A stretch of 64,000 nucleotides of DNA, taken from positions 1 to 64,000 of IMG/VR virus record IMGVR_UViG_3300030419_004471; one strand, written 5' to 3'. A model generated the notes under the pieces. The model was not told where the DNA came from and made no database searches. It saw nothing but the letters and a program-made list of their open reading frames with translations. The position numbers and the translations under genes were made by a program. Positions within the stretch are counted from its first letter, which is position 1, and each line of letters opens with the position of its first letter. Below are positions 320 through 26,379 of the stretch, in pieces.

Positions 320-568
320 TTAAAGTTTTTTAAGTACATCGACATCTGCAGCAACCCAATCCTTACCAGAACCACCCTTCGCATAAAATGCTTTTCTGAT
401 TGCCTCTACCGTGTTCCTAGCTTTTACTCTAACAGGTTTATTATCTAATTCAAGTTTATTAATTCTTTTTCTAGCAAATTTAACTTCCCAAGTTGCAAAT
501 CCTTCACTTAATGTAGTGGGAGTTTCATTTACTGGTTTTAAATCGATAAGTCCACCTAATTTAATCAT
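320..568 (-). CDS. Hypothetical protein (about 82 aa), putative head-internal
   Basis: ORF track 320..637; likely true start is the ATG at 568 (MIKLGGLIDLKPVNE...), overlapping the upstream stop. Confidence 0.7.
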   Translation of the reverse strand: MIKLGGLIDLKPVNETPTTLSEGFATWEVKFARKRINKLELDNKPVRVKARNTVEAIRKAFYAKGGSGKDWVAADVDVLKKL

Positions 569-761: not shown

Positions 762-1216
762 TGGTCTAACTCCTTTATACTTTGTGCGATGTTAATTAAT
801 CTTTCTTTTACATTATATATATGACGATGGGTTCTTTTCCAATACTTATCTTTTGATAATTCATTCATATTTCTAATCTTATTGTACCATCTAAAAAACA
901 TCTCAACTTCTGCTAATTGATATTTAAGTTCTTTTAAACCAATAGCTAATTTTTGATTTGGTGTTCTAGTCTCATCATTTTTAAGCTCTAACCATCTATT
1001 TACAGGTCTTTTTGGTTTTCTACCTTCACCAACTATCTTCATTCCAAATTGAGTAGCAATTTTTTTCCTCTTTTCTTTGTTTTTTTTCTTACCACCAGTA
1101 AAAGCATGAGGTGTGTCGTAACCATCAATGTTTCCAGTTACGTTTACTTCATCCAATTCTTCTTCAACTTCTTGGACAAGTTTACGAATATATTGTTTAA
1201 GCTTTGTTTCTAACAT
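758..1216 (-). CDS. Hypothetical protein, putative prohead core/internal protein
   Basis: 152 aa, LKQYIRKLVQEVEEELDE N-terminus; located between portal and protease. Confidence 0.75.
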   Translation of the reverse strand: MLETKLKQYIRKLVQEVEEELDEVNVTGNIDGYDTPHAFTGGKKKNKEKRKKIATQFGMKIVGEGRKPKRPVNRWLELKNDETRTPNQKLAIGLKELKYQLAEVEMFFRWYNKIRNMNELSKDKYWKRTHRHIYNVKERLINIAQSIKELDQ

Positions 1217-2072
1217 TTTTTATTTCGTTAATCAATTCGTATGCTATCATCATAGCAGATACTTGATTATCTGAAACCACCCTACCAATCTTTGCGTTTT
1301 TCAATACATTGATAGTTTCTTTTAACTTAATTTTTGTAACCTTGTCTTTAACGACTTTATGTTGACCTACTAAATTGGTAATAACTTCTTTTAATTGTTG
1401 AGTATAGTATTCTTTAAATTTGGAAGTATTACTAACATTATTAATATATTCTCTTAATAATGCTTTCTGAGATTTGTTTAGTGTTTTGTGTTTTTTATTG
1501 AAAGTTTCTAATAAAACTTTTGTAGTTAAGAATCTTTCCTCTTTAGATTGTTGTTTAAATTGCTGAATTGCTTTTTGTTCAACTATTTTATTCTTATTCT
1601 TAACTTCAGTTCCTATCAAACTTTCTACTATTGTGTATTTTGAGTTAAATACATCTTTTATATCATAATTCTTAGCCGATTGAGATTCAAATATCTTATA
1701 AATTGAAGCCATCACCTTATAATTTGATATTGGTGATGATAAAAATTGTTGGATATCGAAAGATTCTTGTATTTTTTTAACTAAATTGTATTTTTCTTTA
1801 ATTAATCTTTTTGAATCTATTCTTTTTCTAGCTTCTAAAATAGTATCGATGAATTTTTCAGCACGATTCTCTGATTTATACTTTTCTTCTGATAATAACT
1901 GGTATAATCTAAGCTCTTTACCGATTTCGGTTTTTTGACTAAAGAATTCCTTTAATATTTTCTGTGCATTTTCTTTCGAATTACCGCTCAGAACCTCTAA
2001 AGTTATTTGTCTAACGAGTAATTCAAACAGAACGCCTGTGTTTTTGAATTTACTGTGTCTTATTTTTTTCAT
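1197..2072 (-). CDS. Hypothetical helical protein downstream of portal (prohead assembly candidate)
   Basis: 291-aa ORF with its own upstream ATATTTATA motif; head-module position. Confidence 0.75.
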   Translation of the reverse strand: MKKIRHSKFKNTGVLFELLVRQITLEVLSGNSKENAQKILKEFFSQKTEIGKELRLYQLLSEEKYKSENRAEKFIDTILEARKRIDSKRLIKEKYNLVKKIQESFDIQQFLSSPISNYKVMASIYKIFESQSAKNYDIKDVFNSKYTIVESLIGTEVKNKNKIVEQKAIQQFKQQSKEERFLTTKVLLETFNKKHKTLNKSQKALLREYINNVSNTSKFKEYYTQQLKEVITNLVGQHKVVKDKVTKIKLKETINVLKNAKIGRVVSDNQVSAMMIAYELINEIKNVRNKA

Positions 2073-2141: not shown

Positions 2142-3869
2142 TTAATCGTCTATAATGTTACTTTCATCCAACATATCTGTTTCTTGTAGAAACTTTCTTT
2201 TTGGTGCAACACCATTGACTATATTCTTGATTTTTTCGGCGGAAAACTTATTTTCTTTCTTTACGGCTTTCTTCCTTTCTTCATCTCCGAGAGGGTCTCT
2301 ACCATAAGGATGTTTATCTTTCTTATAAGTATTACCTTCTCTTGGTCTACCACCTTTATCCTTTATCTCTTTTTTTATATTCTCTAAAGATTCTTCAATA
2401 TCTTCTCCTTCGTCCTCCATCGCAGGGTCATTACCCTCATCTTCAATAGAACGATGTCTAAATCTATCTTTTAAATCCTCAATCATTGTTTCTCTTTCTT
2501 TATTGGATTCACCTTTACTTAATTTAAAGATATTATCATAAACCCAATCTTTAGATAACATATTTAATCCTTGAATATCTTGAGCTAATCTAATCTTTTC
2601 ACTCCAAAGATTTACTTTTTCTTGCTCATATATAAACGATGGATTAACTAATGATAATTCAAAATCGGTTAATCTAGCATCAGATATTCCCTGTGAATAT
2701 AAATGAACTATTGCAATCTTACTTAATTCAGATACAACAATTCTTTGTATTCTCTCAATAGTTCTTGCAAATCTAACATCTTCTGCTGCTAATGTTGCTT
2801 TACCATTGATTTGCTCTTCATATCCTAAATATGCCTTTGGAATTTTTAATGCTGCAAATAATTTAGCTTTTAGATAATCAATATCATCTGTATTGTTAAA
2901 TTCTAACCCAGATAAGTTTTCAATATTAGTTCCACTATCACCACCTCTAACAGGAAGATAGAAATCTTCACTAAGGTTCTGCATATTATACTTTAAATTA
3001 TAATCACCTGTATTTTTATCTACAAAAGGTGTTTTTTTCATTTTGTTGATAATCCTTTGCATATAGTTATCAACTTCGTTTGGTGGTATATTACCAATAT
3101 CAATCTTAAAAATTCTTTTTTCAGGAGCTCTCATAATCCTATGAATTAACATAGCATCTTCCATAAGAGATAATTGCTTCCACAATCTTCTACCATTTTC
3201 AATCATAGCTTTACCATATGGTAACCAGTTTGTATCTGCTAATAATCTAAAATGAGCTACCTCATAGTTTTCATAATCCACCTTACCCATATTATCATCT
3301 TCAACGTGGAATTTTACATAATTAGGATTATCTGGTTCTGCTCCTTCTAACCTTTGTGTATTGTAAACTGAAAAAGGACTTACATTTACAATACCTTTAC
3401 CTTCAGCCATTTCTAAACTTAGGAAGAAGTCTCCATACTTACACATATTTCTTACCCAAGGCCAAAGGTTGAATTCGATGTTTAGTACATCATAGAATAA
3501 GTTGTTTAGAATAGCTTGTATCTCTGAATCTTTTGAACGAATTGTTAGTACATCACCATATTCGTTCTTTAATGTAGATTCATCTGCGTATATATCGAGT
3601 GCTGATGCGATAATTGGGTCATTATCCATAGCATCGTAATCTCTGAATATCTCTCTACGAACTTGTTGGTAAGCCATTGATTGTGCTCCCCCAGCTTGTT
3701 CATAGTATGATTTCTGAAGTTTTGTATATCTATCTCTTAGGTGAGATAAATTAGTAATCTGTCTTTCATCGGTATCTGAAACTCTTCTTCTTCCTTTACT
3801 ATCTACTGTTACAATAGCTTGGGCTGAAAAAAGTTTTCTTAATCTACCGAAAAATGAAGTATCTGCCAT
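2142..3869 (-). CDS. Portal protein (T4 gp20-like)
   Basis: Motifs LMEDAMLIHRIMRAPEKRIFKIDIGNIP, EDFYLPVRGG, ALKIPK typical of T4-like portals; adjacent to terminase. Confidence 0.96.
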   Translation of the reverse strand: MADTSFFGRLRKLFSAQAIVTVDSKGRRRVSDTDERQITNLSHLRDRYTKLQKSYYEQAGGAQSMAYQQVRREIFRDYDAMDNDPIIASALDIYADESTLKNEYGDVLTIRSKDSEIQAILNNLFYDVLNIEFNLWPWVRNMCKYGDFFLSLEMAEGKGIVNVSPFSVYNTQRLEGAEPDNPNYVKFHVEDDNMGKVDYENYEVAHFRLLADTNWLPYGKAMIENGRRLWKQLSLMEDAMLIHRIMRAPEKRIFKIDIGNIPPNEVDNYMQRIINKMKKTPFVDKNTGDYNLKYNMQNLSEDFYLPVRGGDSGTNIENLSGLEFNNTDDIDYLKAKLFAALKIPKAYLGYEEQINGKATLAAEDVRFARTIERIQRIVVSELSKIAIVHLYSQGISDARLTDFELSLVNPSFIYEQEKVNLWSEKIRLAQDIQGLNMLSKDWVYDNIFKLSKGESNKERETMIEDLKDRFRHRSIEDEGNDPAMEDEGEDIEESLENIKKEIKDKGGRPREGNTYKKDKHPYGRDPLGDEERKKAVKKENKFSAEKIKNIVNGVAPKRKFLQETDMLDESNIIDD

Positions 3870-3950: not shown

Positions 3951-5531
3951 TTAGTTAATTAACCAAGTTAAATCTTCATCTACATCACCAACTCTTTGTG
4001 TCCAAGGATTATTTTCTAATCCAGATGGAGTTCCTCCATACACTCCACTATGTTGTTGTGATGCTATTCCACCTAACGCTCTTTTGGTTAAATCAATTCC
4101 TTCTTGTCTTAATCTTAAAGCTGTATCTCTAACCCATAATCCGATTGAGAAACTCATAACCAAGTCATCATTATAACTTTTCATTGCTTCTGCTCTATTT
4201 CCCTTCCATATAAATGTAAATAATTCATCTATCAATCTATGAGAACGTACTGTAACTGATTTTTCTCTGAAATAGTCATCTAACTTTGATATTATTAATG
4301 GTCTTGTTTTTTGTGTAGTACTGAATCCAGCAACCATCCCTCTTTCTTCAGCTCTGTATCTGTTAGTCATTTGATGTTCTACATCTACATATTTTAAATC
4401 CTTACTCATATAAAAAAGATTCTTATAAGACCTATCTATTATTTGTTGGATTACCGCCCAACCTATATTTGCGTTCTCCACCACCAATAATGCTTCATTA
4501 TACTCTGTTGCTAATGCAACTAAGAAGTTTCCAAAATCTTTTGTATCTAACTTTCCTTTATATTCTGCAACTTGAGTTGCTTGTTCTATATCTATTACGT
4601 GACAAGCGGAATAATCCGAAGAATCTCCTCGTGCAACGTCAGCCACAACCATATATCCTTTATTATAGTCTGGATATTCCCATTTCCATAAGTTTCCATC
4701 GAATCCTGTCTTTTCTAAAGGGTCTTGACAATATGATTCTTTATAGAATTGTAATAGTTGTGGGTCAATCACTGTATCACCAGAAGAAACGAAATCACAA
4801 TCACATTCTTGAGCTGCTCCTTTTGGTCCTAATAGTTTTTCTTGTTCATCTCTCCAACTTTGGTCTCTTTCAGGATGTACACTCCAATGTAATCTTATAG
4901 TATTAAATGAGTTGTTGTTTTCTTCTGCATCAACCCAAGTCTTATGGAAAAAATTACCAACACCATTTGGAGTCGATAAAATGATTGCATCTCCACCTGT
5001 TGATAGTGTTGATTGTGCTGATACCCATATATCTTCAATGTTATCAATAAATGCTGCCTCATCAAATACCAATAAGGATAGTGCTTCTGAACGTCCTGCA
5101 TCTCCACTGGATGAAGTTGCTTTGATTTGAGACCCATTAGAATATCTTAATGAAAGTTTATTATCTTCTATTGTTGTTTGTTTTAACCAGCTTGGTAAAT
5201 TATCATTCATATACCTAACTTTAGTTACTAAGTTCTTAGCTACCTCTTGTTTGGTTGCAATTACCAATGCATTAAAATCATTATTAAATAACATCTTCCA
5301 TAAAGCATATCCAGCACATAACGTTGATATACCTGTTTGTCTTGATTTAAGAACTATGTTATATCGTTCTTTGTCAAATTCACTAAGTGTTCTTTCTTGG
5401 AATTGATATAAATGAAAAGGTATTCTACCCCGAACAGGGTGTTGTATCATACAATACTTTTTCATAAAATGTATCGGGTCTACCGCACACTTCTGATATT
5501 CTAATTTTATTATATCCTTTAAGGATGCCAT
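3951..5531 (-). CDS. Terminase large subunit (T4 gp17-like)
   Basis: Walker A KSRQTGIST, Walker B LLVFDEAAF, coupling motif STPNG, nuclease motifs ADVARG...D and NDDLVM. Confidence 0.96.
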   Translation of the reverse strand: MASLKDIIKLEYQKCAVDPIHFMKKYCMIQHPVRGRIPFHLYQFQERTLSEFDKERYNIVLKSRQTGISTLCAGYALWKMLFNNDFNALVIATKQEVAKNLVTKVRYMNDNLPSWLKQTTIEDNKLSLRYSNGSQIKATSSSGDAGRSEALSLLVFDEAAFIDNIEDIWVSAQSTLSTGGDAIILSTPNGVGNFFHKTWVDAEENNNSFNTIRLHWSVHPERDQSWRDEQEKLLGPKGAAQECDCDFVSSGDTVIDPQLLQFYKESYCQDPLEKTGFDGNLWKWEYPDYNKGYMVVADVARGDSSDYSACHVIDIEQATQVAEYKGKLDTKDFGNFLVALATEYNEALLVVENANIGWAVIQQIIDRSYKNLFYMSKDLKYVDVEHQMTNRYRAEERGMVAGFSTTQKTRPLIISKLDDYFREKSVTVRSHRLIDELFTFIWKGNRAEAMKSYNDDLVMSFSIGLWVRDTALRLRQEGIDLTKRALGGIASQQHSGVYGGTPSGLENNPWTQRVGDVDEDLTWLIN

Positions 5532-6959: not shown

Positions 6960-9900
6960 TTAAAAGAATATTCCTAATATTTGATTTACAGATGCAAATG
7001 TACCAGTAAGTTTAAAAGTTTTACCTTTATATTGGAATACAATTCCTTCATTTGGTACAATTTTTTTAGCACCTCCGATAGAATTTAATCTCTGAAGTTC
7101 CAGTCTAAGTTTTTCTATCTTTTTAGGGTCACCTGATTTTTTAACATCTTTAGTTGTTTTATCTAATCGCTTCTTTATATCACGAATAGCTTTATCAGGA
7201 TTTACAGTTAGTGCAGATGAAGTAAATTCGAGTACTTCGGCTCCTAATCCTAAGAAAATGTTTTCAAATTTCATTAAGTTATCTTTAGCTATTTTCTTGT
7301 GATTATCTTTTTCATGCTTTTTAGCCCATTCAAGAGTTTTTGCATCTTTAATATTTTTATTATCTAATCTAAACTTCTTATCCATAAATGCCCATCTCTT
7401 AACCAATCCCATTTTGGTTTTATTATCCAATGTAGTTGGAGAATTTTTATCAACCCAATTCTCCCACCAAGATTGATGATATACGGCTACACCATCTGTA
7501 TCTTTTAATTTAAATTCTTTTTGTAGTTTAGAAATTTTAGAATTATACTTTCCTTTTTTAGAAGATAATTTTTGTGATTTAGGTAACTTTACAACTGGTG
7601 GTCCTTGAATTGTATAATTATCTTGAACATCTTTATTCACTTGCTTAATCATACCAGCTAACATTCTAGCTGCTTCTTTATTTTCACCTATTGCATTACC
7701 ATCATCATCATACTCCATAGTTCCGTGGAATATTAATAAAGCTTGTCCATAAGGAATCACATTTACCGAAGTTGGATATATAACTTCAAGGTTCATAAAA
7801 CATGCTCCATCTTTGAACACTTTTTCTCTTTGTTTATCAGTAAGAGATGAGATGGCTTTAGATAAGTCTTTCATTGCGAAGTTATATGCATCACTCAATC
7901 CACCCCTGCCTTGAAACTTATCCGATACTCCCTTTATATCTAAAGCGTTCTCACCTTTGTTTTTAAGGTGTCCCTTATTACGAGCCGCAACCAATCTTCC
8001 ATCCTTCCAACTAATTGCTAATGCTTGCCCGTCTGTTTTTTCTGTTGTTAAATCTAATTCACCATCAAGTGCTCTGTTTACAATATCTTTCAATTGACCG
8101 AAGGTTAAATTTATATCAGTATCAAATGGGTGTGCCATATGTCCATAAGCACCACCTTCGGTAATTATCTCTTCACCCAATCCACTTCTATCGTGTTTAG
8201 AGAATTTACCTAACTTATCAAATGCTCTAAATGCCTTTAACTTCATTACCTTTTGGATTCTCATATTATCTAATTGTTTGAATCTCATATGATTCTTTAC
8301 AATGTAATAAACATTAGCAGTATTACCACCAACTGATTCAATCCAATTTTTATATTTCTTAACTAAATTAGCTGATACCTTTTCGTGTCCAAAGTGTGTG
8401 ATGTGTCCTTTCTTTGGATGGATACCAGCAGTTTCATCTTTTCCAATATCATGCAACATTGCTGCAATTGCAATATCAATATCATCTTCTTTGATTGAAC
8501 GATTTACAACTGTGATTGTGTGTTTAAGTACATTCCCTTCAGGATGTTTATCAACTCTTTGTCCAAAGTTTTTTAAGTTATACACTCTCTTTTGTAAATC
8601 AGAAGGCATTTTCTTAAATAAAGATTTGAAATCTGTGATTCCCATTTCTTTCAATCCTTCTTTTACATATTTATCCTTTTTCAGCATTTTATGTAATTCA
8701 CTACCATCTACTTTACTCCACGATTTATTTGCTCCAAATTGTTTTTTCCAAAGTAATTCAAAAAATGTTTTCTTTTCTTTAGGTGATAATCCTTTTATCT
8801 TTCTATTGATTTCTCCTCTTCGCTTCCAAACATATTTTTTGAAATCCATATAAAAGAATTCATTAACTCTCTCATCTATTTTTTTGTATTGATAATCTTT
8901 ATCTGAATCTGTATTACTTCGTTGGTTATCCACTCTCTTTTTAATTTGAGCCATTTCCTTTTTACCAGGATATCCTAATGATTCTTTACCATCGAACTTA
9001 TCTGCTTCTTTTGCTCTTAATGCTGGTAAGAATCTAAATTTTGCTCTCTTTAAAACTCTTTTCTTTTTTCTTAATACATTTTTATGAACAATCTTTGCTT
9101 GTTGAATCGATAATTCTTTTTTCTTCATACCAGGATATAAGTCTTTCATAAACTCATCATATACTTGTAGGTATGCTTTTTTGTATGCAATCTTTTTAAG
9201 TTTAGCAAGAGGTTTTCTTCTCTTCATCGTTCTTGCTCTTCTTCTTGCTATAGCAGCTCTTTTACCAGCCATCGCTGCTTTCCTTCTAAGTAAATCAGCA
9301 GGTCTTAGTTTACCTTTACTTCTCTCATCTAATTCAACTTCGAATCCTTCTTTCATTAGTCGGAAAGTCACTACCTTCCTTCCATTGATAGTTGGCATTC
9401 CGTGGTCATCTACTCCTATATCTTTAACAACCAATTTCTTATTCTTAAATCTTCCTACCAATATAGTATCACCAATTTCTACTGGTAATGTTATTGCCTC
9501 ATCTAATGATGCTTCAAATTCTTTTTCCAATTCTTTACTATCTTTTGCATCATCACCACTTAATTCTTTTTCTTGTTTTATATCACTCTTATCTACTACT
9601 ACTTCATATCCCACCAATGCAGCTTTACGAGTTACATGCTTATACCAATCTGAATATGCTTGTGATGAATAAATATCTACTTGATTGTTTGGTGTTTTAG
9701 TTCCAATTACACCAGCTGGGAAATATGATACTGAGTTTTGTGGTCCATTAGGATATTCTGGATGTTCGTAATAATCTTCGAACTTTTCATCACCAATCAT
9801 ATTGATAACAGTCCATCCCAATTTTGCTGCTCTCTTCGCAGATACTTTCTTAAATGTTTTATAGTTTGGTATAAAGAAGTTAGGTCCATCATCTACATCT

Positions 9901-10568
9901 GCTCCAGTTAAAGAACCCATAGTTATTTCGTTAATAACATATTCTTCAATTCTTTCTTTAGATACGAATAATCCTTCGTTTAATTTATCTGTAATTATCT
10001 TAAAGATAGTTTTATTAAATTTACCATAAGCAGTATCTTTAAAGAATTTTTCTTTTTGGTCATCTGAACCTAAAGATAATCCTTGTCTAACTGCCGTACC
10101 ACTTATTCCTCCACCTTGTCTTGGTGCTACATAAAGGTATCCTCTATCCTCATATCCTTGTGTTGGATTACCATCCCACTTTTGAAAGTATTTGTGAGAT
10201 AATCTACTTGCATCCTTTTCACCAACAACAGTTACAAATGCTGTTGTATTCTTATTAAACTTTTTAAGTACTTCGGTAGGAGCGTAAGGATTCTTAACTT
10301 GAACTACTTTGTTTTTTGGAATTGGAAACATAGTAGTCATTATTTGTTTCTTTTCTTTGAAGTTGAATGGTGAACGTCCTTTTTCTGTTTTATTGGATGT
10401 TCCTATGAATACATTCTTTTTACCGAATTTTTGTGTAAGATGTTTATAGACAAGATAATGTCCTTTGTGCATAGGTTGAAATCTCCCAACATATACTACA
10501 ACAGTATCTTTTATTACTGATTCCTCTAATAGAATCTGGTCAACTAAATAATTACTAAGTTTGCTCAT
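6960..10568 (-). CDS. 1202-aa multidomain protein: HxGH nucleotidyltransferase (NMNAT/cytidyltransferase-like) + basic region + CCA-enzyme-type HD domain + RNA-ligase-like (KxDG) domain
   Basis: GRFQPMHKGH and ISGTAVR; HPEGNVLKHT...MLHDIGK...GHE; GHMAHPFD...TEKTDG...NEGIVF...FKLTG. Confidence 0.8.
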   Translation of the reverse strand: MSKLSNYLVDQILLEESVIKDTVVVYVGRFQPMHKGHYLVYKHLTQKFGKKNVFIGTSNKTEKGRSPFNFKEKKQIMTTMFPIPKNKVVQVKNPYAPTEVLKKFNKNTTAFVTVVGEKDASRLSHKYFQKWDGNPTQGYEDRGYLYVAPRQGGGISGTAVRQGLSLGSDDQKEKFFKDTAYGKFNKTIFKIITDKLNEGLFVSKERIEEYVINEITMGSLTGADVDDGPNFFIPNYKTFKKVSAKRAAKLGWTVINMIGDEKFEDYYEHPEYPNGPQNSVSYFPAGVIGTKTPNNQVDIYSSQAYSDWYKHVTRKAALVGYEVVVDKSDIKQEKELSGDDAKDSKELEKEFEASLDEAITLPVEIGDTILVGRFKNKKLVVKDIGVDDHGMPTINGRKVVTFRLMKEGFEVELDERSKGKLRPADLLRRKAAMAGKRAAIARRRARTMKRRKPLAKLKKIAYKKAYLQVYDEFMKDLYPGMKKKELSIQQAKIVHKNVLRKKKRVLKRAKFRFLPALRAKEADKFDGKESLGYPGKKEMAQIKKRVDNQRSNTDSDKDYQYKKIDERVNEFFYMDFKKYVWKRRGEINRKIKGLSPKEKKTFFELLWKKQFGANKSWSKVDGSELHKMLKKDKYVKEGLKEMGITDFKSLFKKMPSDLQKRVYNLKNFGQRVDKHPEGNVLKHTITVVNRSIKEDDIDIAIAAMLHDIGKDETAGIHPKKGHITHFGHEKVSANLVKKYKNWIESVGGNTANVYYIVKNHMRFKQLDNMRIQKVMKLKAFRAFDKLGKFSKHDRSGLGEEIITEGGAYGHMAHPFDTDINLTFGQLKDIVNRALDGELDLTTEKTDGQALAISWKDGRLVAARNKGHLKNKGENALDIKGVSDKFQGRGGLSDAYNFAMKDLSKAISSLTDKQREKVFKDGACFMNLEVIYPTSVNVIPYGQALLIFHGTMEYDDDGNAIGENKEAARMLAGMIKQVNKDVQDNYTIQGPPVVKLPKSQKLSSKKGKYNSKISKLQKEFKLKDTDGVAVYHQSWWENWVDKNSPTTLDNKTKMGLVKRWAFMDKKFRLDNKNIKDAKTLEWAKKHEKDNHKKIAKDNLMKFENIFLGLGAEVLEFTSSALTVNPDKAIRDIKKRLDKTTKDVKKSGDPKKIEKLRLELQRLNSIGGAKKIVPNEGIVFQYKGKTFKLTGTFASVNQILGIFF

Positions 10569-10586: not shown

Positions 10587-10595
10587 TATAAATAT
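10587..10595 (-). promoter_or_regulatory. Putative late promoter motif ATATTTATA
   Basis: Intergenic, 18 nt upstream of the 10568 start. Confidence 0.7.
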
Positions 10596-13658: not shown

Positions 13659-14207
13659 TTATTGATTATAATATAGTTCTGGATATTCTACTATAATATG
13701 TATCCCACCATCAGATAATGCTTTCTTATATGCTGGGAGTATTTTTTCTACTTTATCTAATTTGTGAATAGTAGAGTTTGTAACTATTTGTTCAAAAGCA
13801 TCTGTATAATCTGCTTTGTGTTGATGACCAGGGTCTAATGGTTTATCACTTCCCTTACCAACTCTTACAATTACATTTGGTTTCCACTCACCATCAGACA
13901 TTGCTTCCAATTTATCTAAATGATTTACTAACTGATTACAAGCGAGAATTAAAAAATCCCAACGTGGATAAAAAGTAACTACTTGATGACCAGCCATAGC
14001 CAATCCCATAGTCATTCCCATTTGGGTTTCTTCCATTACTGGTGTTTCTATCATTCTCTCTTTTGGTAATCCCTCAATGGTTTTACTCATTGGGTTACCA
14101 TAATAAACTATTTGTTGTCCGATGAATATTGTTTTATCATCTTCCATCGTAAGTTTCATTGCTTCAGTTAAAGCATCTAAATAAGGTGTGTATTCTGGGT
14201 TTGCCAT
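13659..14207 (-). CDS. TPP-dependent enzyme beta subunit (E1-beta/transketolase pyrimidine-binding domain only)
   Basis: ETPVMEETQMGMTMGLAMAG, NQLVNH, GHQH motifs; 182 aa. Confidence 0.85.
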   Translation of the reverse strand: MANPEYTPYLDALTEAMKLTMEDDKTIFIGQQIVYYGNPMSKTIEGLPKERMIETPVMEETQMGMTMGLAMAGHQVVTFYPRWDFLILACNQLVNHLDKLEAMSDGEWKPNVIVRVGKGSDKPLDPGHQHKADYTDAFEQIVTNSTIHKLDKVEKILPAYKKALSDGGIHIIVEYPELYYNQ

Positions 14208-15193
14208 TATGGTTTTGAATTTGGGTTATATTCGTGTTTATGTTCTTTGTACCAATCGAGTGCATCTTTCAATCCACTCCTTAAATCGTATTTTGGTTTC
14301 CATCCTAACTTTCTCAATTTCTCATTTGATAATAATCTCTTTGGAATCATAGGGGCTTTGTTGTTTACGAATTCGATAGGATTGTCGTTATCCTCCAATT
14401 CTTTGATAAGTTCTAATACTTCCATTACAGTATGCCCTTTACCGTAACATACATTATAGATATCATATTCATCTACATTCTCTGCTACACATATGAATCC
14501 ACTTACCATATCATCAACGTGAATAACATCTCTAACTTCAGTTCCATCTCCCCAAAGTGGAATAGGATTTAAATTATCTGCTACCTTTCTAATATTAGCA
14601 GGTGTTACGTGGCATTTTTCGAAATCATACTTATCATTTGGTCCGAATGCATTTGATGGTCTTATAATTACGCATTGCATCGGGTTATGTATTTGGTTTG
14701 AGAAGAATTCACAAAGTGTTTCTCCATATCTTTTCATCCAACCTACTGCTTTATATACAGGATATATGTTTGGAGTTTGTACATTCATATCTTCAGTACA
14801 ATATTCATCCCCTACATCAGGATATGTTGTATTTGATGATATAAACATAAATTTACGAACTTTGTTTCTCCAACTTTGTTCCATTAAGTTTACATTCATC
14901 TCTACATTAGGTGTAACGTGTAATAGTGGGTTTACTTTAGTGTCTAATGCATTCGATGTGTTAGCTGCTGCATGAAATACTACATCTACATCTTTAGATA
15001 CCTTCTCACAGAAGTCTGCATCTTGTAGATTACCTATTATATGTTCCGTTTTCCATTTATAGTCATCTCTTAAGTCTCTACTATATGATGTAGTTCTGAT
15101 ATTGGTGTATCCATTATCGTATAACATCTTTACCAACCTCGAACCAATGAATCCACTAGCTCCCGTTACTAATATTTTGTCTTTTTTCTTCAT
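14207..15193 (-). CDS. NAD-dependent epimerase/reductase (GDP-L-fucose synthase-like SDR)
   Basis: VTGASGFIG, RPSNAFGPND, WGDGTEVRD; likely start MKKKDK at 15193. Confidence 0.85.
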   Translation of the reverse strand: MKKKDKILVTGASGFIGSRLVKMLYDNGYTNIRTTSYSRDLRDDYKWKTEHIIGNLQDADFCEKVSKDVDVVFHAAANTSNALDTKVNPLLHVTPNVEMNVNLMEQSWRNKVRKFMFISSNTTYPDVGDEYCTEDMNVQTPNIYPVYKAVGWMKRYGETLCEFFSNQIHNPMQCVIIRPSNAFGPNDKYDFEKCHVTPANIRKVADNLNPIPLWGDGTEVRDVIHVDDMVSGFICVAENVDEYDIYNVCYGKGHTVMEVLELIKELEDNDNPIEFVNNKAPMIPKRLLSNEKLRKLGWKPKYDLRSGLKDALDWYKEHKHEYNPNSKP

Positions 15194-16118
15194 AATGTTT
15201 ATATGTGTTTTTAATTCCTTGTTCAAATCCTAATTTTGGTAATAATCCATATTCCTCTTGTATTTTAGTACTCATTTTTCTCCTCATATCACCGTTGGGC
15301 TTAGAAGTGTCCCAATTTATGTTAATTTCTTTACCACTAACCTTTGAAACGGTCTCAATCATCCTTTTTATTGATATTTCTTCACCACTTCCTAAATTAG
15401 TTGTTATATGTAGTTTATCTTCGAAGCATTTTATACATCCATTAGCTACATCACCAGCATAAATGAAATCTCTTGTTGGTGTACCATCTCCCCATGCTTC
15501 TATTTCACCATCAGAGTCATAAATCTTTCTACAAGTAGCTCCAATAACAGTAGCACCCTCTCCAAAGTTATCATATTCTCCAAATATGTTAGCAGGTCTA
15601 ACAATTGTCCATTTATCATACCCATGCTGAACCTTATATGCTTCTAAATAAAGTTCTGGTATTCTTTTACTCCAAGATGGAAACCAATCATTGGGAGATG
15701 GTAGTGTATTCCAAACCGAATCTTCTACAAATTCTTCTGCGGGTTCATAAACTCCAACTGATGACATAAAAACTAACCAACAATTGTGTTTATGAGAATT
15801 ATCTATAATGTTTGTATTAACTTTTATCGATGGTTCTAAGAAATCTAATGGTTTTTCTTTAGCTCTTATAGGTGAACCCTTTATTCCAAATGCATTAATA
15901 ACTCCATTAAAGTTATAATGGTCAAATAATACATTAACCTCATCAGAATCTCTTAAATCCATATCTTGAAATATAAATCTATCACTATCAGGTAATTCTT
16001 TGGAATATTTTAAATCGACTCCTACAACAGAGTAATCATAATCCAATAATTTATGAACTAAATGAGTTCCAACTAACCCACTACATCCCGTAACTAATAT
16101 TCTTCCTTTTGTTCCCAT
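15156..16118 (-). CDS. NAD-dependent epimerase/reductase (GDP-L-fucose synthase-like SDR)
   Basis: VTGCSGLVG, RPANIFG, WGDGTPTRDFIY, WDTSKPNG; likely start MGTKG at 16118 (TAATG overlap). Confidence 0.85.
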   Translation of the reverse strand: MGTKGRILVTGCSGLVGTHLVHKLLDYDYSVVGVDLKYSKELPDSDRFIFQDMDLRDSDEVNVLFDHYNFNGVINAFGIKGSPIRAKEKPLDFLEPSIKVNTNIIDNSHKHNCWLVFMSSVGVYEPAEEFVEDSVWNTLPSPNDWFPSWSKRIPELYLEAYKVQHGYDKWTIVRPANIFGEYDNFGEGATVIGATCRKIYDSDGEIEAWGDGTPTRDFIYAGDVANGCIKCFEDKLHITTNLGSGEEISIKRMIETVSKVSGKEININWDTSKPNGDMRRKMSTKIQEEYGLLPKLGFEQGIKNTYKHYEEKRQNISNGS

Positions 16119-16759
16119 TAAAATACCACCCATTTACCAGTACCATAATGCGGGTACTTCGATTCATACTTATAATAGATTACATCTTCTGGTATTTCTC
16201 TTTGAATACCACCCCAAGTATCTAATGTTGGTGTATTTGTTGATACACCATTATCTTCTACCACAAAATAAAGTGGTAAATCGTAATTTCTAGCATATTT
16301 GTGTACTTCATAGAAGATTCCACTCTCAAAAGCCATATCTCCTACAAAAACCCATACCTTTTCATCACTTTTTTTAAGTTTAAGTGCCTTTGCAACACCT
16401 AAAGCTATTGGTAATGTACCTGTTACGATTGCAGATGCATAAAATTTACAATCCTTTTCTACAATTGTTATAGATTTACCATCTAATATTTTCTTTTTTA
16501 ACTTTTTTGGTTCTATTCCGTGCAATAATCCGTGGTAATGAGACCTCCAAGTAGAAAAAACCCAATCCGTTGGATGTATTTTTGAAAATATTTTGATTAA
16601 TTGCTCTTCGTTACCATTTGATAAATGAACTGGACCTGTTATTTCTCCGTTTGACCAATGCGTTATGATATCATCTTCGAAATCTATCAAATCTTGCTTT
16701 GACCAATTACCTTCTGTCCATCTATCTTTGTGATAATCTAAATTATTTATCTTTCCCAT
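16118..16759 (-). CDS. TPP-dependent enzyme alpha subunit (E1-alpha-like)
   Basis: HLSNGNEE, STWRSHYH, TPP-binding GDMAFESG...VEDN. Confidence 0.87.
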   Translation of the reverse strand: MGKINNLDYHKDRWTEGNWSKQDLIDFEDDIITHWSNGEITGPVHLSNGNEEQLIKIFSKIHPTDWVFSTWRSHYHGLLHGIEPKKLKKKILDGKSITIVEKDCKFYASAIVTGTLPIALGVAKALKLKKSDEKVWVFVGDMAFESGIFYEVHKYARNYDLPLYFVVEDNGVSTNTPTLDTWGGIQREIPEDVIYYKYESKYPHYGTGKWVVF

Positions 16760-17318
16760 TTTTATCTCTTTTAGAAATTATTGGATTAGCGCAAGGCCAT
16801 TCTATATTGAACTCTTTGCTATTCCATTTTATTGTTTGTTGTTTATCTACATCATTAAATTCACCTTCATATGCCATCTTATAATAAAATATTGAATCCT
16901 TTTCCATTACATAATGTCCATTGGCAAATCCTGGTGGAATTAATACCTGTATTCGTGTTGATGGTGATAAAATAAAGTTCTCCCACTTTCCTGTCTTTAT
17001 ATCTAATACAACTAAATATATCTTTCCACTTAGACACGATACCATCTTCCAAGTCTTATCATCATAATGCAATCCTCTAAGAACATTAAATTCAGATTTA
17101 GAGTATCTATCATGCTTAAATTGTACTCCTCTATCTCGTTCTTCTAATGGAATTAATGAATCGTAATAATCAGAATGATATGTTGTTGAAATTTCTCCTC
17201 GTGATTCGTAATATACCGATGGATTTATTACTGTAACTCCAGGTAATACTTTGGAAGTATAAAATGGAAAATCATTCCACTTTCTTTCTTTATAATATGT
17301 ACTATGTTTGATTTCCAT
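16743..17318 (-). CDS. rmlC: dTDP-4-dehydrorhamnose 3,5-epimerase-like (cupin)
   Basis: SRG, VLRGLHY, IPPGFANGH, YYK motifs. Confidence 0.88.
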   Translation of the reverse strand: MEIKHSTYYKERKWNDFPFYTSKVLPGVTVINPSVYYESRGEISTTYHSDYYDSLIPLEERDRGVQFKHDRYSKSEFNVLRGLHYDDKTWKMVSCLSGKIYLVVLDIKTGKWENFILSPSTRIQVLIPPGFANGHYVMEKDSIFYYKMAYEGEFNDVDKQQTIKWNSKEFNIEWPCANPIISKRDKNGKDK

Positions 17319-18270
17319 AACCTAAAGGGAATCCGTTCCTATATTTTGAACTTAAATCCGATATTAAAATGTTATATGTTTTAATTAATTCTACTATTCC
17401 TCTATCTAAATTAAATTGTGGAGTCCACATTGTTTTTTCCAACTTTTCATTAGATACTATATAATCTCTTTTGTCAGGATCTTGATAATAATCAGAATAA
17501 GTTACTGCAAAATCTGGTATGTATTCTTGTATTTTCTCTACTAACTCTTGCTTTGATAAATTTGCGTTAGATAAACCTACATTAAATACTTCTCCACTAT
17601 ATTTTTCATATCTGTCCATCATAAATACAAATGTATATGCAACATCTCTAATATGAATATAGTTTCTTTTAAAATTCTTTTCAAAAATAGTAATGTACTT
17701 ATCAGTTAATGCTTTATATACAAATTCATTAACCAACAAATCCATTCTCATTCTTTGGGATGAACCAAAGACGGTGGCAAGTCTTAATGAAATGCCACCA
17801 ACTTTCAATACCTCTCGTTCTGCATCAATCTTCGTTATTCCATAATGAGATATTGGGTTTAGAGGACTATCTTCGGTACATATACCATCCTCTCCTATTC
17901 CGTATCCGCTATTTGTATTCGGATATAATATTTTTTGAGTTTTTGTTAGGTTATTACAAATAAATTTTATATGTTTGTAATTAACATCAGTTGCGAGTTT
18001 CTTATCTCTATCACAAGCTGGAAATCCAACTATAGCTGCTAATGGAACAATCACATCAGCTTCTTTTACATAAGGTAGTAGTTTTTTATGGTTTCTAACA
18101 TCACCATTTATAAATTCAAAGTTTGTTCTCCAAGAATGTCCTATTAATGATGTTTGATTGTACATCAAATTATCATATACTGTTAGTTTTGTTATTCCAC
18201 CATTTCTTAATAGAGTTTCAACTAATATTGAACCTAAATAACCTGCTCCTCCTGTAATTAATATCTTCAT
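17302..18270 (-). CDS. NAD-dependent epimerase/dehydratase (extended SDR)
   Basis: ITGGAGYLGS, LAAIVG, YGITK (YxxxK), RLATVFG. Confidence 0.9.
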   Translation of the reverse strand: MKILITGGAGYLGSILVETLLRNGGITKLTVYDNLMYNQTSLIGHSWRTNFEFINGDVRNHKKLLPYVKEADVIVPLAAIVGFPACDRDKKLATDVNYKHIKFICNNLTKTQKILYPNTNSGYGIGEDGICTEDSPLNPISHYGITKIDAEREVLKVGGISLRLATVFGSSQRMRMDLLVNEFVYKALTDKYITIFEKNFKRNYIHIRDVAYTFVFMMDRYEKYSGEVFNVGLSNANLSKQELVEKIQEYIPDFAVTYSDYYQDPDKRDYIVSNEKLEKTMWTPQFNLDRGIVELIKTYNILISDLSSKYRNGFPLGYGNQT

Positions 18271-18668
18271 TCTATAGTAACTTTTTCTTTTTCTTGAACT
18301 TTATCGTAAAAATCTTTTTCGAATTCGTTAAAATCTTTTATATCTTTACCATTTATTTTTATTTTAATATTTCTTTCTGAATTTAATATCCAATTTATTG
18401 TAGTTGGTGATAAATTTTCAATATTACATTCTTTATCATAATCAATTGGGAATATAAATGATTCATTTTCATCATATCCTACTTTATGTGCTTCTAAAAT
18501 ACTCCAACATTTTATATTATTGTTATCATCTTTATATAAATGATTTTTTGTTGGTTCTTCTTTAGATGCTATTGTATTTTTTTTAAACTCATTTAATAAT
18601 TTGTTTTTATCATATCCATTAAGACAATAACCATTTGGTTCTACTATTTCAAATAAAAAATCTATCAT
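18267..18668 (-). CDS. Hypothetical protein
   Basis: 133-aa ORF, ATGA-coupled on both sides. Confidence 0.65.
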   Translation of the reverse strand: MIDFLFEIVEPNGYCLNGYDKNKLLNEFKKNTIASKEEPTKNHLYKDDNNNIKCWSILEAHKVGYDENESFIFPIDYDKECNIENLSPTTINWILNSERNIKIKINGKDIKDFNEFEKDFYDKVQEKEKVTIE

Positions 18669-19402: not shown

Positions 19403-19406
19403 ATAA

Positions 19407-20969: not shown

Positions 20970-20993
20970 TTGTTGTTCTTATATTAATATATA

Positions 20994-22436: not shown

Positions 22437-22439
22437 AAT

Positions 22440-22910: not shown

Positions 22911-23065
22911 TTTATTCCACCATTTTCAATTGTGTCTATCATAGTTATTATCTGGTCGTGCCATTTACTATAAGTGTCTCTATCGCCTTCCCAAGTTGCC
23001 TGTTCGCATCTTGTTTTATAAAAATCTCTAATTATTACTAATAATTTAACTATTACGCTCTTCAT
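22907..23065 (-). CDS. Small hypothetical protein (52 aa)
   Basis: Not in ORF track; MKSVIVKLLVIIRDFYKTRCEQATWEGDRDTYSKWHDQIITMIDTIENGGIK; ATGA overlaps at both ends. Confidence 0.7.
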   Translation of the reverse strand: MKSVIVKLLVIIRDFYKTRCEQATWEGDRDTYSKWHDQIITMIDTIENGGIK

Positions 23066-24721: not shown

Positions 24722-24725
24722 AATT

Positions 24726-26356: not shown

Positions 26357-26379
26357 TAATCTTAGATTATGGTGTTGTA

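What the first reader, a model, noticed from the sequence alone, without database searches (positions are those of the whole stretch)
6960..10568. Putative capsid-packaged polyprotein carrying nucleotidyltransferase, HD and RNA-ligase-like enzymes (candidate counter-defence kit)
Seen in sequence: one ORF joins an HxGH nucleotidyltransferase (NMNAT-like, ISGTAVR), a small SH3-like module, an Arg/Lys-rich segment, a CCA-enzyme-type HD domain (about 8170-8650) and a ligase-like domain with KTDG, EGIVF and K motifs (about 6960-8160). Domain junctions carry hydrophobic-x-E sites (ILLEE, KLNEG, VINEI, SLDEA, LMKEG, ELDER, YVKEG, IITEG), and the gene has the late-type motif and sits near the head genes. 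Established: the T4 gp21 protease cleaves after I/L-x-E in head proteins; the HD domain of the E. coli CCA-adding enzyme has 2',3'-cyclic phosphodiesterase and phosphatase activity; T4 Pnk/Rnl1 repair PrrC-cut tRNA; NMNAT-like phage enzymes help rebuild NAD+ after defence-mediated depletion. Inference: the protein is packaged, cut into separate enzymes and injected to heal and seal RNA and/or restore NAD+ before phage gene expression begins.
Basis: partly seen in the sequence, partly recalled or inferred. Interest (0 to 1): 0.85.

Follow-up and report, generated by a model that had tools for sequence, protein, structure and literature searches.

The report
Modular phage RNA-repair polyprotein, probably capsid cargo
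One 1202-residue gene of an uncultured T4-like marine phage joins an NAD-synthesis-type enzyme, a tRNA-end-cleaning enzyme and a new kind of RNA-ligase-like enzyme, and comparative evidence suggests, without proving, that the head protease cuts it up and the virion carries it.

Summary
The ORF (6960-10568, minus strand, 1202 aa) is real. It contains an NMNAT-like HxGH nucleotidyltransferase, an unassigned conserved region, a small beta-rich module, a 31% Lys+Arg segment, a CCA-enzyme-type HD domain and a C-terminal ligase-fold domain.

The ligase-like domain matches no Pfam, NCBIfam or PHROG model. It defines a large family (1784 clusters at 50% identity) found almost only on uncultured viral contigs. 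Relatives swap the middle modules: CCA-adding enzyme in 49 of the 120 best hits, a Pnk-like kinase, GNAT and others. This points to tRNA end-healing and sealing.

Evidence for cutting and packaging is comparative:
- [LI]-x-E sites at five module borders are kept in 55-94% of 38 non-redundant relatives (background 5.5%).
- They are depleted inside three of the modules.
- The phage encodes a gp21-family (S77) head protease.
- The gene sits two genes upstream of the large terminase in four divergent phages.
- Where the enzymes are separate genes, four neighbours share one N-terminal leader ending in [IL]-x-E.

The raw site count in this protein is not above chance. The "late motif" reads TATTTATA in the gene's sense, the reverse of T4's. 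No virion data exist. Enzyme assignments are solid. Packaging and cleavage is about an even bet.

The parts
6960..10568 (-). Whole ORF, 1202 aa plus stop: the modular polyprotein
   Evidence: The identical protein P0001 is on 213.6-kb contigs.
10587..10594 (-). Promoter-like motif. It reads TATTTATA in the gene's sense (TATAAATA on the + strand), 18 nt upstream of the ATG.
   Evidence: The same motif, in the same orientation, lies upstream of at least 11 minus-strand genes, including the portal gene (3928) and the scaffold-like ORF (2111).
10521..10568 (-). N-terminal leader, residues 1-16, ending L-L-E15-E16. Candidate targeting and propeptide segment.
   Evidence: The leader type with [LI]xE lies 10-17 residues before GRFQP in 152 of 181 homologues. 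The site is kept in 94% of aligned non-redundant relatives. AF2 predicts helix 3-15 at pLDDT about 62.
9975..10520 (-). NMNAT-like HIGH-superfamily nucleotidyltransferase, residues 17-198, ending K-L-N-E198
   Evidence: Pfam CTP_transf_like; PDB and NCBIfam NadM/NMNAT; AF2 pLDDT about 85-90 and Foldseek top hits NadM, NMNAT, NadD and PPAT. Invariant G28-R-F-Q-P, H37, S156, T158 and R161.
9498..9926 (-). Conserved region X, residues 215-357, function unknown. Flanked by I-N-E214 and L-D-E357.
   Evidence: Recurs in homologues. No Pfam, PHROG or PDB match. AF2 pLDDT below 50. [LI]xE O/E is 0.15 inside it.
9348..9497 (-).
   Evidence: Four short strands at pLDDT about 65. It occurs at different positions in relatives and in an unrelated huge-phage record at 53% identity (H5).
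8646..9323 (-). Highly basic segment, residues 416-641 (about 31% Lys+Arg)
   Evidence: No family match. A separate 86-aa K/R-rich ORF sits between the split NT and ligase genes in L007.
8172..8645 (-). HD phosphohydrolase domain of the CCA-enzyme type, residues 642-799, ending G-L-G-E799
   Evidence: Pfam HD at 690-765; TIGR02692 HD part, E 2.6e-9; tblastn match to a phage tRNA nucleotidyltransferase (H4). It is followed by a PolyA_pol head domain in 49 of the 120 best homologues.
6963..8156 (-). Ligase-fold domain of a new family, residues 805-1202. It starts right after I-T-E804. Candidate catalytic Lys is K844.
   Evidence: 1784 representative clusters. Invariant K844, D846, G847, R863, E928, H948, E1174, G1175 and K1186. 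AF2 pLDDT 86.9. The top 35 Foldseek PDB matches are all RNA/DNA ligases or capping enzymes. hhalign puts KxDG and motif III in register with T4 Rnl1.
3951..5531 (-). Large terminase (context; two genes downstream)
2142..3869 (-). T4-type portal (context)
   Evidence: PF07230
1197..2072 (-). Scaffold-like 291-aa ORF with 14 [LI]xE sites against 4.6 expected (context; a likely protease substrate)
   Evidence: Homologues sit at the same position in Mel-JY01 and L005.

Best explanation
The gene encodes a modular 'polyvalent' RNA-repair protein of a T4-like marine phage.

Shown by sequence and fold:
- It joins an NMNAT-type adenylyltransferase, an HD phosphoesterase of the kind found in CCA-adding enzymes, and a C-terminal lysine-nucleotidyltransferase (ligase) domain. 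That domain belongs to a previously undescribed family, with a roughly 190-residue helical insert between motifs IIIa and IV.
- The first and last modules are kept across thousands of phage relatives, while the middle is exchanged (CCA-adding enzyme, Pnk-like kinase, GNAT, zinc-finger and DUF modules).

Inferred mechanism:
- The HD domain clears 2',3'-cyclic or 3'-phosphate ends of tRNA cut by host nucleases.
- The ligase domain self-adenylylates on K844 and reseals the break.
- The NMNAT-like domain makes NAD+ or another adenylylated product that works with the ligase.

Further inference, about even odds:
- The protein is made with the head genes and taken into the prohead through its conserved 15-16-residue leader.
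- The phage's gp21-family S77 protease cuts it after [LI]-x-E at the module borders (E15/16, E198, E214, E357, E804, perhaps E415, E641 and E799).
- The pieces travel with the DNA into the next cell, so repair activities are there before any phage gene is expressed.
For: Domains.

RNA-repair context from relatives:
- 49 of the 120 best homologues carry a PolyA_pol head domain.
- P0144 carries, in order, NT, DUF5661, an AAA_33/Pnkp-like kinase, HD, a CCA-adding enzyme and the ligase domain.

NT-ligase linkage:
- The two co-occur in most architectures, sometimes in reversed order.
- They are neighbours when encoded as separate genes.

Protease:
- Peptidase_S77 / phrog_207 (E 1e-50) lies at L002:20429-21010, downstream of a T4-type portal.
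- This protease family cleaves after Glu, and in T4 it removes N-terminal targeting propeptides from internal proteins and Alt (PMC5694885; PMC3012670).

Sites:
- [LI]xE sits directly before the ligase domain in 217 of 252 relatives, and in the leader in 152 of 181.
- Border sites are kept in 94, 79, 65, 55 and 92% of the aligned rows among 38 non-redundant relatives (19-38 rows per site). The background mean is 5.5% and the maximum 64.5%.
- Observed/expected is 2.5 in the 40 residues before the ligase domain. Inside the domains it is 0.50 (ligase), 0.61 (NT) and 0.15 (X). [LI]xD, [LI]xK and [LI]xQ stay at about 0.8-1.4, and other window ORFs give 1.20.
- Independently inserted modules (GNAT, HD, ROS/MucR, CCA) are also bracketed by such sites.

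Leaders:
- In L007 four clustered genes, including the separate NT and ligase genes, begin with M-x-x-(I/L)-G-P-Y-(I/L)-x-E.
- All four Gly codons are used, so selection acts on the peptide.

In-phage precedent:
- Two head-module proteins share a 15-residue leader ending in x-x-E.
- The phrog_1987 domain starts right after an [LI]xE site in both the 153-aa and the 501-aa protein.

Synteny: the gene lies two to seven genes upstream of the large terminase in this phage, Mel-JY01, L005 and L010.
Against: - There is no virion proteome or biochemical result for any member.
- In this protein alone the site count is not above chance.
- LxE and IxE depletion inside the ligase domain ranks only 11th and 39th of 281 residue pairs, so shared ancestry could explain it.
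- The conserved [LI]-x-E-G-G could be a structural part of the ligase domain. About 10% of relatives have Met, Cys or Ala in place of Glu.
- In the reversed-order fusions and in L005, the NT and ligase domains are joined with no cleavable site.
- The leader differs from the MIKLGGLIDL-type leader of two head proteins of the same phage.
- The timing of the promoter-like motif is unknown, and it is not the T4 late consensus in orientation.
- This protein has no 5'-kinase, so end healing would be incomplete unless another gene supplies it.
- The ligase fold match is weak in absolute terms (best E 5e-3, TM about 0.2).
- Sequence profiles find no solved ligase.
Confidence: 0.5

Rival explanations
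1. The enzymes are the same, but the protein is never packaged or cut. It works as one large cytoplasmic RNA-repair and nucleotide enzyme during infection. The conserved [LI]-x-E strings are structural linker or domain-cap elements.
For: - The site count in this protein is not above chance.
- The depletion ranks are not extreme.
- NT and ligase are joined without any site in some relatives, which argues that they act as one unit.
- The E-G-G-A-Y-G-H string continues into a conserved domain motif.
- Known phage tRNA repair enzymes (T4 Pnkp and Rnl1) are ordinary intracellular enzymes (established knowledge; T4 annotation).
Against: - Border sites in otherwise variable linkers are kept in 55-94% of relatives, against a 5.5% background.
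- The residues around I-T-E804 have pLDDT below 50, so they are not confidently part of the fold.
- The peptide-level leader shared by four neighbouring genes in L007 has no obvious role in a cytoplasmic enzyme.
- The position next to the packaging and head module is conserved in four divergent phages.
Confidence: 0.3
2. The ligase-like domain is mainly a morphogenetic factor, as T4 gp63 (Rnl1) is both an RNA ligase and a tail-fibre attachment catalyst. That would explain its place among structural genes.
For: - T4 rnlA is annotated as an RNA ligase and tail fibre attachment catalyst.
- T4 Rnl1 is among the top fold matches.
- The gene sits in a structural and packaging neighbourhood.
Against: - All catalytic ligase motifs are invariant across the family.
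- The fusion partners are RNA-end enzymes (CCA-adding, kinase, HD), not virion parts.
- The neighbours are head and packaging genes, not tail-fibre genes.
Confidence: 0.05
3. The C-terminal domain acts on DNA. It would be a nick-sealing or end-processing ligase tied to genome packaging, with the HD and NT domains serving nucleotide metabolism.
For: - It is adjacent to the terminase in four lineages.
- DNA ligases also appear among the fold matches.
- The basic segment could bind DNA.
Against: - The best fold matches are RNA ligases: Trl1-LIG, Rnl1, Rnl3, Rnl5 and Rnl2.
- There is no OB or DNA-binding domain of DNA ligases; the protein ends 16 residues after motif V.
- The recurrent partners are tRNA enzymes.
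Confidence: 0.07
4. The conserved NT-ligase pair is a cofactor-coupled unit. Either the ligase uses NAD+ and the NMNAT-like domain remakes it from NMN and ATP, or the NT domain adenylylates 5'-phosphate RNA ends directly for the ligase. On this reading the other modules are accessories.
For: - NT and ligase co-occur in both domain orders and as neighbouring genes.
- In the reversed fusions they are joined by a short linker with no cleavage motif.
- A Nudix gene neighbours a stand-alone ligase gene, as in NadM-Nudix enzymes.
Against: - Nothing in the sequence shows NAD+ use by the ligase domain.
- In this protein about 600 residues and several candidate cleavage sites separate the two domains.
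- This is purely inferential.
Confidence: 0.08

Closest known systems
T4 Pnkp + Rnl1 tRNA repair (heal and seal after anticodon-nuclease attack), and bacterial Pnkp/Hen1
   Same: It has an end-healing phosphoesterase and a lysine-adenylate ligase. Relatives add a Pnk-like P-loop kinase (P0144). T4 Rnl1 is among the top fold matches, with KxDG and motif III in register.
   Different: - The healing domain is an HD domain, not a HAD or calcineurin-type phosphatase.
- This protein has no kinase.
- The ligase belongs to a different family with a helical insert.
- All parts are fused in one ORF with an NMNAT-like domain.
- The genome position is in the head and packaging module.
Rnl1-type ligases (T4 Rnl1, fungal Trl1 ligase domain)
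   Same: These are the best structural matches (8rbj, 5tt6, 2c5u). Motifs I, III, IIIa, IV and V occur in the canonical order.
   Different: - The helical module lies between motifs IIIa and IV, not after motif V.
- Sequence similarity is not significant (hhalign E 0.08; no PDB hit by profile).
- No Pfam, NCBIfam or PHROG model matches.
Bacterial class II CCA-adding enzyme with an HD domain (for example E. coli Cca, a multifunctional CCA addition/repair protein)
   Same: The HD domain is closest to the HD part of a CCA tRNA nucleotidyltransferase. Many homologues carry a PolyA_pol head domain and its RNA-binding domain.
   Different: This protein lacks the polymerase head. In relatives the HD domain precedes the head domain rather than following it.
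NadM/NadR-type NMNAT, and phage NAD+ reconstitution pathways (NARP2, NARP3)
   Same: It has the GRFQPxHxGH and ISxTxxR motifs and an NMNAT/NadM-like fold. Phages are known to use NMNAT-type enzymes to rebuild NAD+ (bioRxiv 10.1101/2024.02.11.579819 and PMC13464706).
   Different: - Scores are far below the equivalog cut-offs (34 against 397 bits).
- No Nampt, NR kinase or transporter partner was seen.
- It is fused to a ligase rather than to a Nudix or kinase domain.
Polyvalent proteins of phages and conjugative elements (Iyer et al. 2017, PMC5512222)
   Same: It is a large multi-enzyme phage protein with a variable domain set, encoded next to virion genes. Such proteins are proposed to be delivered with the DNA and processed into units.
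   Different: - It has no built-in zincin-like or other peptidase domain.
- Processing would be done by the head maturation protease.
- That survey found no RNA ligase in polyvalent proteins.
T4 internal proteins and Alt: capsid-targeted cargo with short N-terminal propeptides removed by gp21
   Same: It has a short conserved N-terminal leader ending in x-x-E. An S77 protease is encoded in the genome. Diverse cargo lies behind a common leader in L007. There is also a basic segment.
   Different: - Here several enzymes are strung in one precursor with internal sites.
- Similarity of the leader to the T4 targeting sequence was not tested.
- Presence in the virion is unproven.

Membership tests
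Covalent nucleotidyltransferase superfamily (ATP/NAD+ ligases, capping enzymes) | Motif I KxDG with the nucleophilic lysine | tested here: met
   K844-T-D-G. K, D and G are invariant in 16 diverse relatives and aligned with K99 of T4 Rnl1.
Covalent nucleotidyltransferase superfamily (ATP/NAD+ ligases, capping enzymes) | Motifs III, IIIa, IV and V in canonical order | tested here: met
   E928 (NLEV), H948 (FHG), E1174-G1175 (EGIVF) and K1186 (FKLTG) are all invariant and lie on predicted strands.
Covalent nucleotidyltransferase superfamily (ATP/NAD+ ligases, capping enzymes) | Nucleotidyltransferase fold | tested here: inconclusive
   The AF2 model has pLDDT 86.9. The top 35 Foldseek PDB hits are all ligases or capping enzymes, but the best E is 4.8e-3 and TM about 0.2, because of the large inserts.
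Covalent nucleotidyltransferase superfamily (ATP/NAD+ ligases, capping enzymes) | Self-adenylylation and end joining | not testable with these tools
   This needs a biochemical assay.
Rnl1 family (T4 Rnl1 / Trl1 ligase domain) | An all-helical tRNA-binding domain appended after motif V | tested here: not met
   The protein ends 16 residues after motif V. The helical module (about residues 965-1169) is inserted between motifs IIIa and IV.
Rnl1 family (T4 Rnl1 / Trl1 ligase domain) | Significant sequence similarity | tested here: not met
   hhalign E 0.08. The profile search of the PDB finds no ligase.
NMNAT (NadM/archaeal type) | HxGH and ISxTxxR motifs on a Rossmann-like HIGH fold | tested here: met
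   Motifs at residues 34-37 and 155-161; Pfam score above the cut-off; the top fold hits are NadM and archaeal NMNAT.
NMNAT (NadM/archaeal type) | Equivalog-level score, or NMN-binding residues | tested here: not met
   The best NCBIfam score is 34 bits against a cut-off of 397, and only the first 60-70 residues match. NMN-binding residues were not examined.
HD domain of CCA-adding/repair enzymes | HD metal-binding motif | tested here: met
   Pfam HD scores 31.9 bits against a cut-off of 22. H675, H705-D706 and later His residues are present.
HD domain of CCA-adding/repair enzymes | Association with a PolyA_pol head domain in the same protein | tested here: not met
   Absent from this protein. 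Present in 49 of the 120 best homologues.
Polyvalent proteins (PMC5512222) | Many conflict-related domains in one phage protein, encoded beside virion genes | tested here: met
   Six modules. The gene is two genes upstream of the terminase.
Polyvalent proteins (PMC5512222) | An own processing peptidase (a zincin-like MPTase is the commonest) | tested here: not met
   No peptidase domain in Pfam, NCBIfam or PHROGs.
T4-type capsid-targeted internal cargo | gp21-family protease encoded by the phage | tested here: met
   PF03420 and phrog_207 (E 1e-50) at L002:20429-21010.
T4-type capsid-targeted internal cargo | A short conserved N-terminal leader ending at a protease-type site | tested here: met
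   L-L-E15 is kept in 94% of relatives. Four genes share a leader in L007.
T4-type capsid-targeted internal cargo | Presence of the matured protein in virions | not testable with these tools
   No proteome of a carrier was found.

The most novel reading that the evidence does not exclude
The family is a capsid-cargo carrier. A conserved short leader takes a string of interchangeable enzymes into the prohead: the ligase, an NMNAT-like enzyme, HD, a CCA-adding enzyme, a kinase, GNAT and others. The head maturation protease cuts the string at [LI]-x-E borders. The pieces are then ejected with the DNA. Widespread uncultured aquatic phages (marine and some freshwater) would therefore arrive already equipped to mend cut tRNA and rebuild NAD+ before any phage gene is transcribed. 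The tight pairing of the NMNAT-like and ligase domains may in addition reflect a cofactor-coupled ligase.
Probability: 0.4. Interest if true: 0.85.

Novelty: new variant of a known kind. Interest (0 to 1): 0.72.

Why it matters
RNA repair as a phage counter-defence is known only from enzymes made after infection, such as T4 Pnkp and Rnl1. Virion-delivered effectors are known mostly for anti-restriction and for taking over host transcription. A pre-packaged repair kit matured by the head protease would join the two ideas. It would also explain how phages survive defences that cut tRNA or drain NAD+ at the very start of infection.

Independently of that, the C-terminal domain is a large, undescribed branch of the ligase superfamily: 1784 clusters at 50% identity, with no Pfam, NCBIfam or PHROG model. 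It is nearly absent from cultured phages, with only 3 of 50,697 phage records. Its obligatory pairing with an NMNAT-like enzyme is unexplained. The family's swappable middle modules are also a ready-made catalogue of candidate anti-defence activities in uncultured ocean phages.

Tried and rejected
- Whole-protein enrichment of [LI]xE or hydrophobic-x-E is not significant.
- A peak of [LI]xE exactly at residue 15 across this phage's proteins (5 against a mean of 1.3) does not survive correction for 43 positions.
- Depletion of LxE and IxE inside the ligase domain ranks 11th and 39th of 281 residue pairs, so it is only suggestive.
- The sequence profile of the ligase domain against the PDB gave only spurious eS6 matches. 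hhalign against T4 Rnl1 was in register but not significant.
- Region X and the basic segment have no match in the PDB or PHROGs (the PDB search covered X and the beta module only). Whole-protein Pfam and NCBIfam scans also hit neither. X was not foldable with 23 sequences.
- Trying to class the TATTTATA motif as 'late' by annotating the genes behind it failed, because most have no PHROG function.
- Looking for cellular homologues as a control for the L-x-E-G-G string failed. The single-protein scan found only three short MAG contigs, at least one of them a phage fragment (terminase, portal and protease present in L005).
- There are no tRNA genes in the window.
- No paper on this family, on Mel-JY01, or on virion-packaged RNA repair was found.
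- Burroughs and Aravind 2016 could not be read.

Full report
**The object.** The window is AT-rich (about 30% GC), and every long ORF that is not nested inside another lies on the minus strand. ORF 6960-10568 (-) is uninterrupted and encodes 1202 residues. The identical protein occurs on marine metagenome contigs of about 213.6 kb. It is therefore not an assembly artefact.

**The phage.** The large terminase is 56-57% identical to those of Microcystis phage Mel-JY01 and the Flavobacterium 'immuto' phages, and about 32% identical to cyanophage gp17. The portal is T4-type (PF07230). Just beyond the window's left end lies a gp21-family head maturation protease (PF03420; phrog_207, E 1e-50). Upstream of the ORF is a long sugar and glycan biosynthesis cluster. 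Downstream come two small ORFs, then the terminase, the portal and a scaffold-like ORF.

**N-terminal enzyme.**
- Residues 17-198 are a HIGH-superfamily nucleotidyltransferase, with GRFQPMHKGH and ISGTAVR.
- Pfam CTP_transf_like scores above its cut-off.
- The best PDB and NCBIfam sequence matches are NadM and archaeal NMNAT.
- The AF2 model of this part has pLDDT about 85-90. Its best structural matches are NadM, archaeal NMNAT, NadD and PPAT.
- Scores are far below any equivalog cut-off. 'NMNAT-like' is safe; the substrate is inferred.

**Middle of the protein.**
- Residues 215-357 are conserved in relatives but match nothing and fold poorly.
- Residues 358-407 form a small module with four short predicted strands at pLDDT about 65. 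It recurs at different places in relatives and in an unrelated huge-phage record. 'SH3-like' is possible but unproven.
- Residues 416-641 are about 31% Lys+Arg.
- Residues 642-799 hold an HD domain above the Pfam cut-off. Its nearest model is the HD part of a CCA tRNA nucleotidyltransferase (E 2.6e-9). It also matches a phage tRNA nucleotidyltransferase by tblastn.

**C-terminal domain.**
- Residues 805-1202 match no Pfam, NCBIfam or PHROG model.
- An exhaustive HMMER scan found 1784 representative clusters (50% identity level). The domain is nearly always at the C-terminus of proteins of 400-1930 residues, and it also occurs alone.
- Among 16 diverse members the invariant residues are the ligase motifs: K844-x-D-G, R863-N, E928, H948, E1174-G1175 and K1186.
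- The AF2 model is confident (pLDDT 86.9, pTM 0.82). Its top 35 PDB matches are all RNA ligases, DNA ligases or capping enzymes, led by the fungal tRNA ligase and T4 Rnl1. The scores are weak (best E 4.8e-3, TM about 0.2).
- hhalign against T4 Rnl1 is not significant (E 0.08), but it puts KxDG on K99 and NLEV on motif III.
- The secondary-structure map shows a helical module of about 190 residues between motifs IIIa and IV. The protein ends 16 residues after motif V. It is therefore a ligase-superfamily domain but not a member of the Rnl1 family.
- It is almost absent from cultured phages: 3 of 50,697 records. Among 185,579 species genomes it turns up only on three short MAG contigs, and one of these (L005) carries phage head and packaging genes.

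**What relatives say about function.**
- More than 2787 proteins match the whole ORF.
- The first and last modules stay while the middle changes.
- 49 of the 120 best hits carry a PolyA_pol head domain. Others carry GNAT, DUF5661 or a ROS/MucR zinc finger.
- P0144 strings together NT, DUF5661, a P-loop kinase (AAA_33, with weak matches to the Pnkp and PSTK kinases), HD, a complete CCA-adding enzyme and the ligase domain.
- A kinase, a phosphoesterase, a ligase and CCA restoration are the parts list of tRNA repair. Background on these systems in phages is in PMC7824862.
The window protein itself lacks a kinase.
- The NT and ligase domains co-occur in most architectures, in both orders. When they are separate genes they sit in the same small cluster. 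Their pairing therefore looks functional, though its chemistry is unknown.

**Cleavage sites.**
- In this protein alone the count is not above chance: 13 against 9.0 +/- 2.7.
- Placement is what is unusual. Ten of the 13 sites lie at module borders.
- The pattern holds across the family:
  - [LI]xE directly precedes the G-G-A-Y-G-H start of the ligase domain in 217 of 252 proteins.
  - It lies 10-17 residues before GRFQP in 152 of 181.
  - The alignment held 38 non-redundant relatives (41-78% identical); 29-38 of them had residues aligned at each of these sites. The sites at E15, E198, E214, E357 and E804 are kept in 94, 79, 65, 55 and 92% of the aligned rows. Random positions give a mean of 5.5%, a 95th percentile of 39.5% and a maximum of 64.5%.
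- Observed/expected is 2.5 in the 40 residues before the ligase domain. Inside the domains it is 0.50 (ligase), 0.61 (NT) and 0.15 (X).
- [LI]xD, [LI]xK and [LI]xQ stay between 0.8 and 1.4, and other ORFs of the window give 1.20.
- Independently inserted modules in relatives are also bracketed by such sites.
- Caveat: within one family many residue pairs deviate. LxE and IxE rank 11th and 39th of 281. The depletion is therefore supportive, not decisive.
- The I-T-E804 residues fall in a low-confidence stretch just before the folded domain.

**Leaders and in-phage precedent.**
- In locus L007 the NT and ligase are separate genes.
- Four clustered genes there begin with M-x-x-(I/L)-G-P-Y-(I/L)-x(1-2)-E: a 344-aa gene, a 128-aa gene, the NT and the ligase. 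All four glycine codons are used and the upstream DNA is unrelated, so the peptide itself is under selection.
- A common short leader ending at a Glu site in front of unrelated cargo is how T4 targets its internal proteins to the prohead core, and gp21 then removes it (PMC3012670; PMC5694885). Related giant-phage proteases also cleave after x-x-E, including 13-24-residue propeptides.
- In the window's own phage:
  - Two head-module proteins share a 15-residue leader ending in x-x-E.
  - The phrog_1987 domain starts right after an [LI]xE site in both a 153-aa and a 501-aa protein.
  - The ORF after the portal has 14 sites against 4.6 expected, like a scaffold destined for degradation.
  - A 66-aa head-module ORF has a leader ending V-L-M-E-E-S, close to the polyprotein's I-L-L-E-E-S.

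**Synteny.** The gene lies shortly upstream of the large terminase in four divergent phages. Two genes separate them in this phage, L005 (41% identical ligase domain) and L010 (a stand-alone ligase). Six small genes separate them in Mel-JY01.

**What argues against the packaging model.**
- No virion proteome exists for any carrier, and no paper on the family was found.
- About 10% of relatives have Met, Cys or Ala in place of the Glu before the ligase domain.
- In the reversed-order fusions and in L005, the NT and ligase domains are joined without a site. Release of every module cannot be a general rule.
- The polyprotein's leader differs from the MIKLGGLIDL-type leader in the same phage.
- The 'late' motif is TATTTATA in the sense orientation, not T4's TATAAATA. 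It is shared with the portal and scaffold-like genes, but its timing is unknown.
- T4 Rnl1 doubles as a tail-fibre attachment factor. That offers another reason for a ligase to sit among structural genes.

**Comparison with known systems.**
- The enzymology resembles T4 Pnkp/Rnl1 and bacterial repair cassettes. It differs in using an HD domain, a new ligase family and an NMNAT-like partner.
- The architecture resembles the polyvalent proteins of Iyer et al. (PMC5512222). It lacks their own peptidase, and that survey found no RNA ligases in such proteins.
- The proposed delivery resembles T4 internal proteins and Alt.
- NAD+ rebuilding by phage NMNAT-type enzymes is established for NARP2 and NARP3. 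No NMN-supplying partner was seen here.

**Verdict.**
- The enzyme assignments are well supported.
- The RNA-repair role is likely (about 0.7).
- Protease maturation and virion delivery are about an even bet.
- This is a new variant of known kinds (polyvalent or capsid-cargo proteins, and RNA repair systems), built around a new ligase family. It is testable in one cultured phage and in vitro.

Noticed in passing
window + strand 2111, 3928, 6924, 10587, 26380, 31990, 42264, 43589, 45581, 58537, 61046, 61582: A recurrent intergenic motif reads (a)TATTTATA(t) in the sense of the minus-strand genes, mostly 18-60 nt before the ATG. It is the reverse complement of the T4 late consensus. TATAAATA in the sense orientation occurs only four times, at positions that fall within listed long ORFs. 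This is probably the clade's own promoter element.
   Followed up: partly
window 13659-27403: A large glycan and nucleotide-sugar cluster. It holds several NAD-dependent epimerases/dehydratases, a dTDP-sugar isomerase, split transketolase/E1-like ORFs, a second small cytidylyltransferase (22440-22910), two family-7 glycosyltransferases fused to Laminin_G_3 domains, a GT2-like ORF and a radical-SAM-like ORF.
   Followed up: partly
window 320-565 and L002:20001-20249, 21007-22512, 22521-22982: Two head-module proteins (about 82 aa and 501 aa) start with the same leader, MIKLGGLIDL-x-P-x-x-E15. The phrog_1987 domain begins immediately after an [LI]xE site in both the 153-aa protein (E15) and the 501-aa protein (E382). 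These look like protease-defined boundaries.
   Followed up: partly
window 1197-2072: The 291-aa ORF after the portal has 14 [LI]xE sites against 4.6 expected. Its homologues sit at the same position in Mel-JY01 and L005. It is likely the scaffold or core protein that the head protease degrades.
   Followed up: partly
L007:4623-9260: In this cluster four genes share the leader M-x-x-(I/L)-G-P-Y-(I/L)-x-E: a 344-aa gene, a 128-aa gene, the NT and the ligase. An 86-aa K/R-rich ORF and a Peptidase_C92 gene lie between them. This may be a cassette of leader-tagged cargo genes.
   Followed up: partly
L009:59-4485: Five consecutive genes around a stand-alone ligase gene, including a NUDIX gene, each have an [LI]xE within their first 13 residues (for example MKLLE and MKLNE).
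   Followed up: no
proteins P0265, P0267, P0252, P0263, P0264; L005:3743-6427: Some relatives have the reversed order, ligase then NT, joined by a short Lys/Glu/Pro linker with no [LI]xE. L005 has L-L-L-M instead of L-x-E before the ligase domain. In these lineages the two enzymes must stay joined.
   Followed up: partly
L004 (SHWS01000026.1): The closest genome-collection hit (68% identical ligase domain) is a 10-kb contig binned into a Lake Baikal Pelagibacteraceae MAG. Together with the 30% GC this hints at a SAR11-type host, but it may only be a binning artefact.
   Followed up: no
window 27400-31986, 45613-51540, 34098-37241, 40181-41122, 41174-41656: Two giant ORFs (1528 and 1975 aa) are without assignable function. 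Also present are an SbcC-like ATPase fused to a metallophosphoesterase-like N-terminus, a DnaG-type primase and a 2OG-Fe(II) oxygenase.
   Followed up: no
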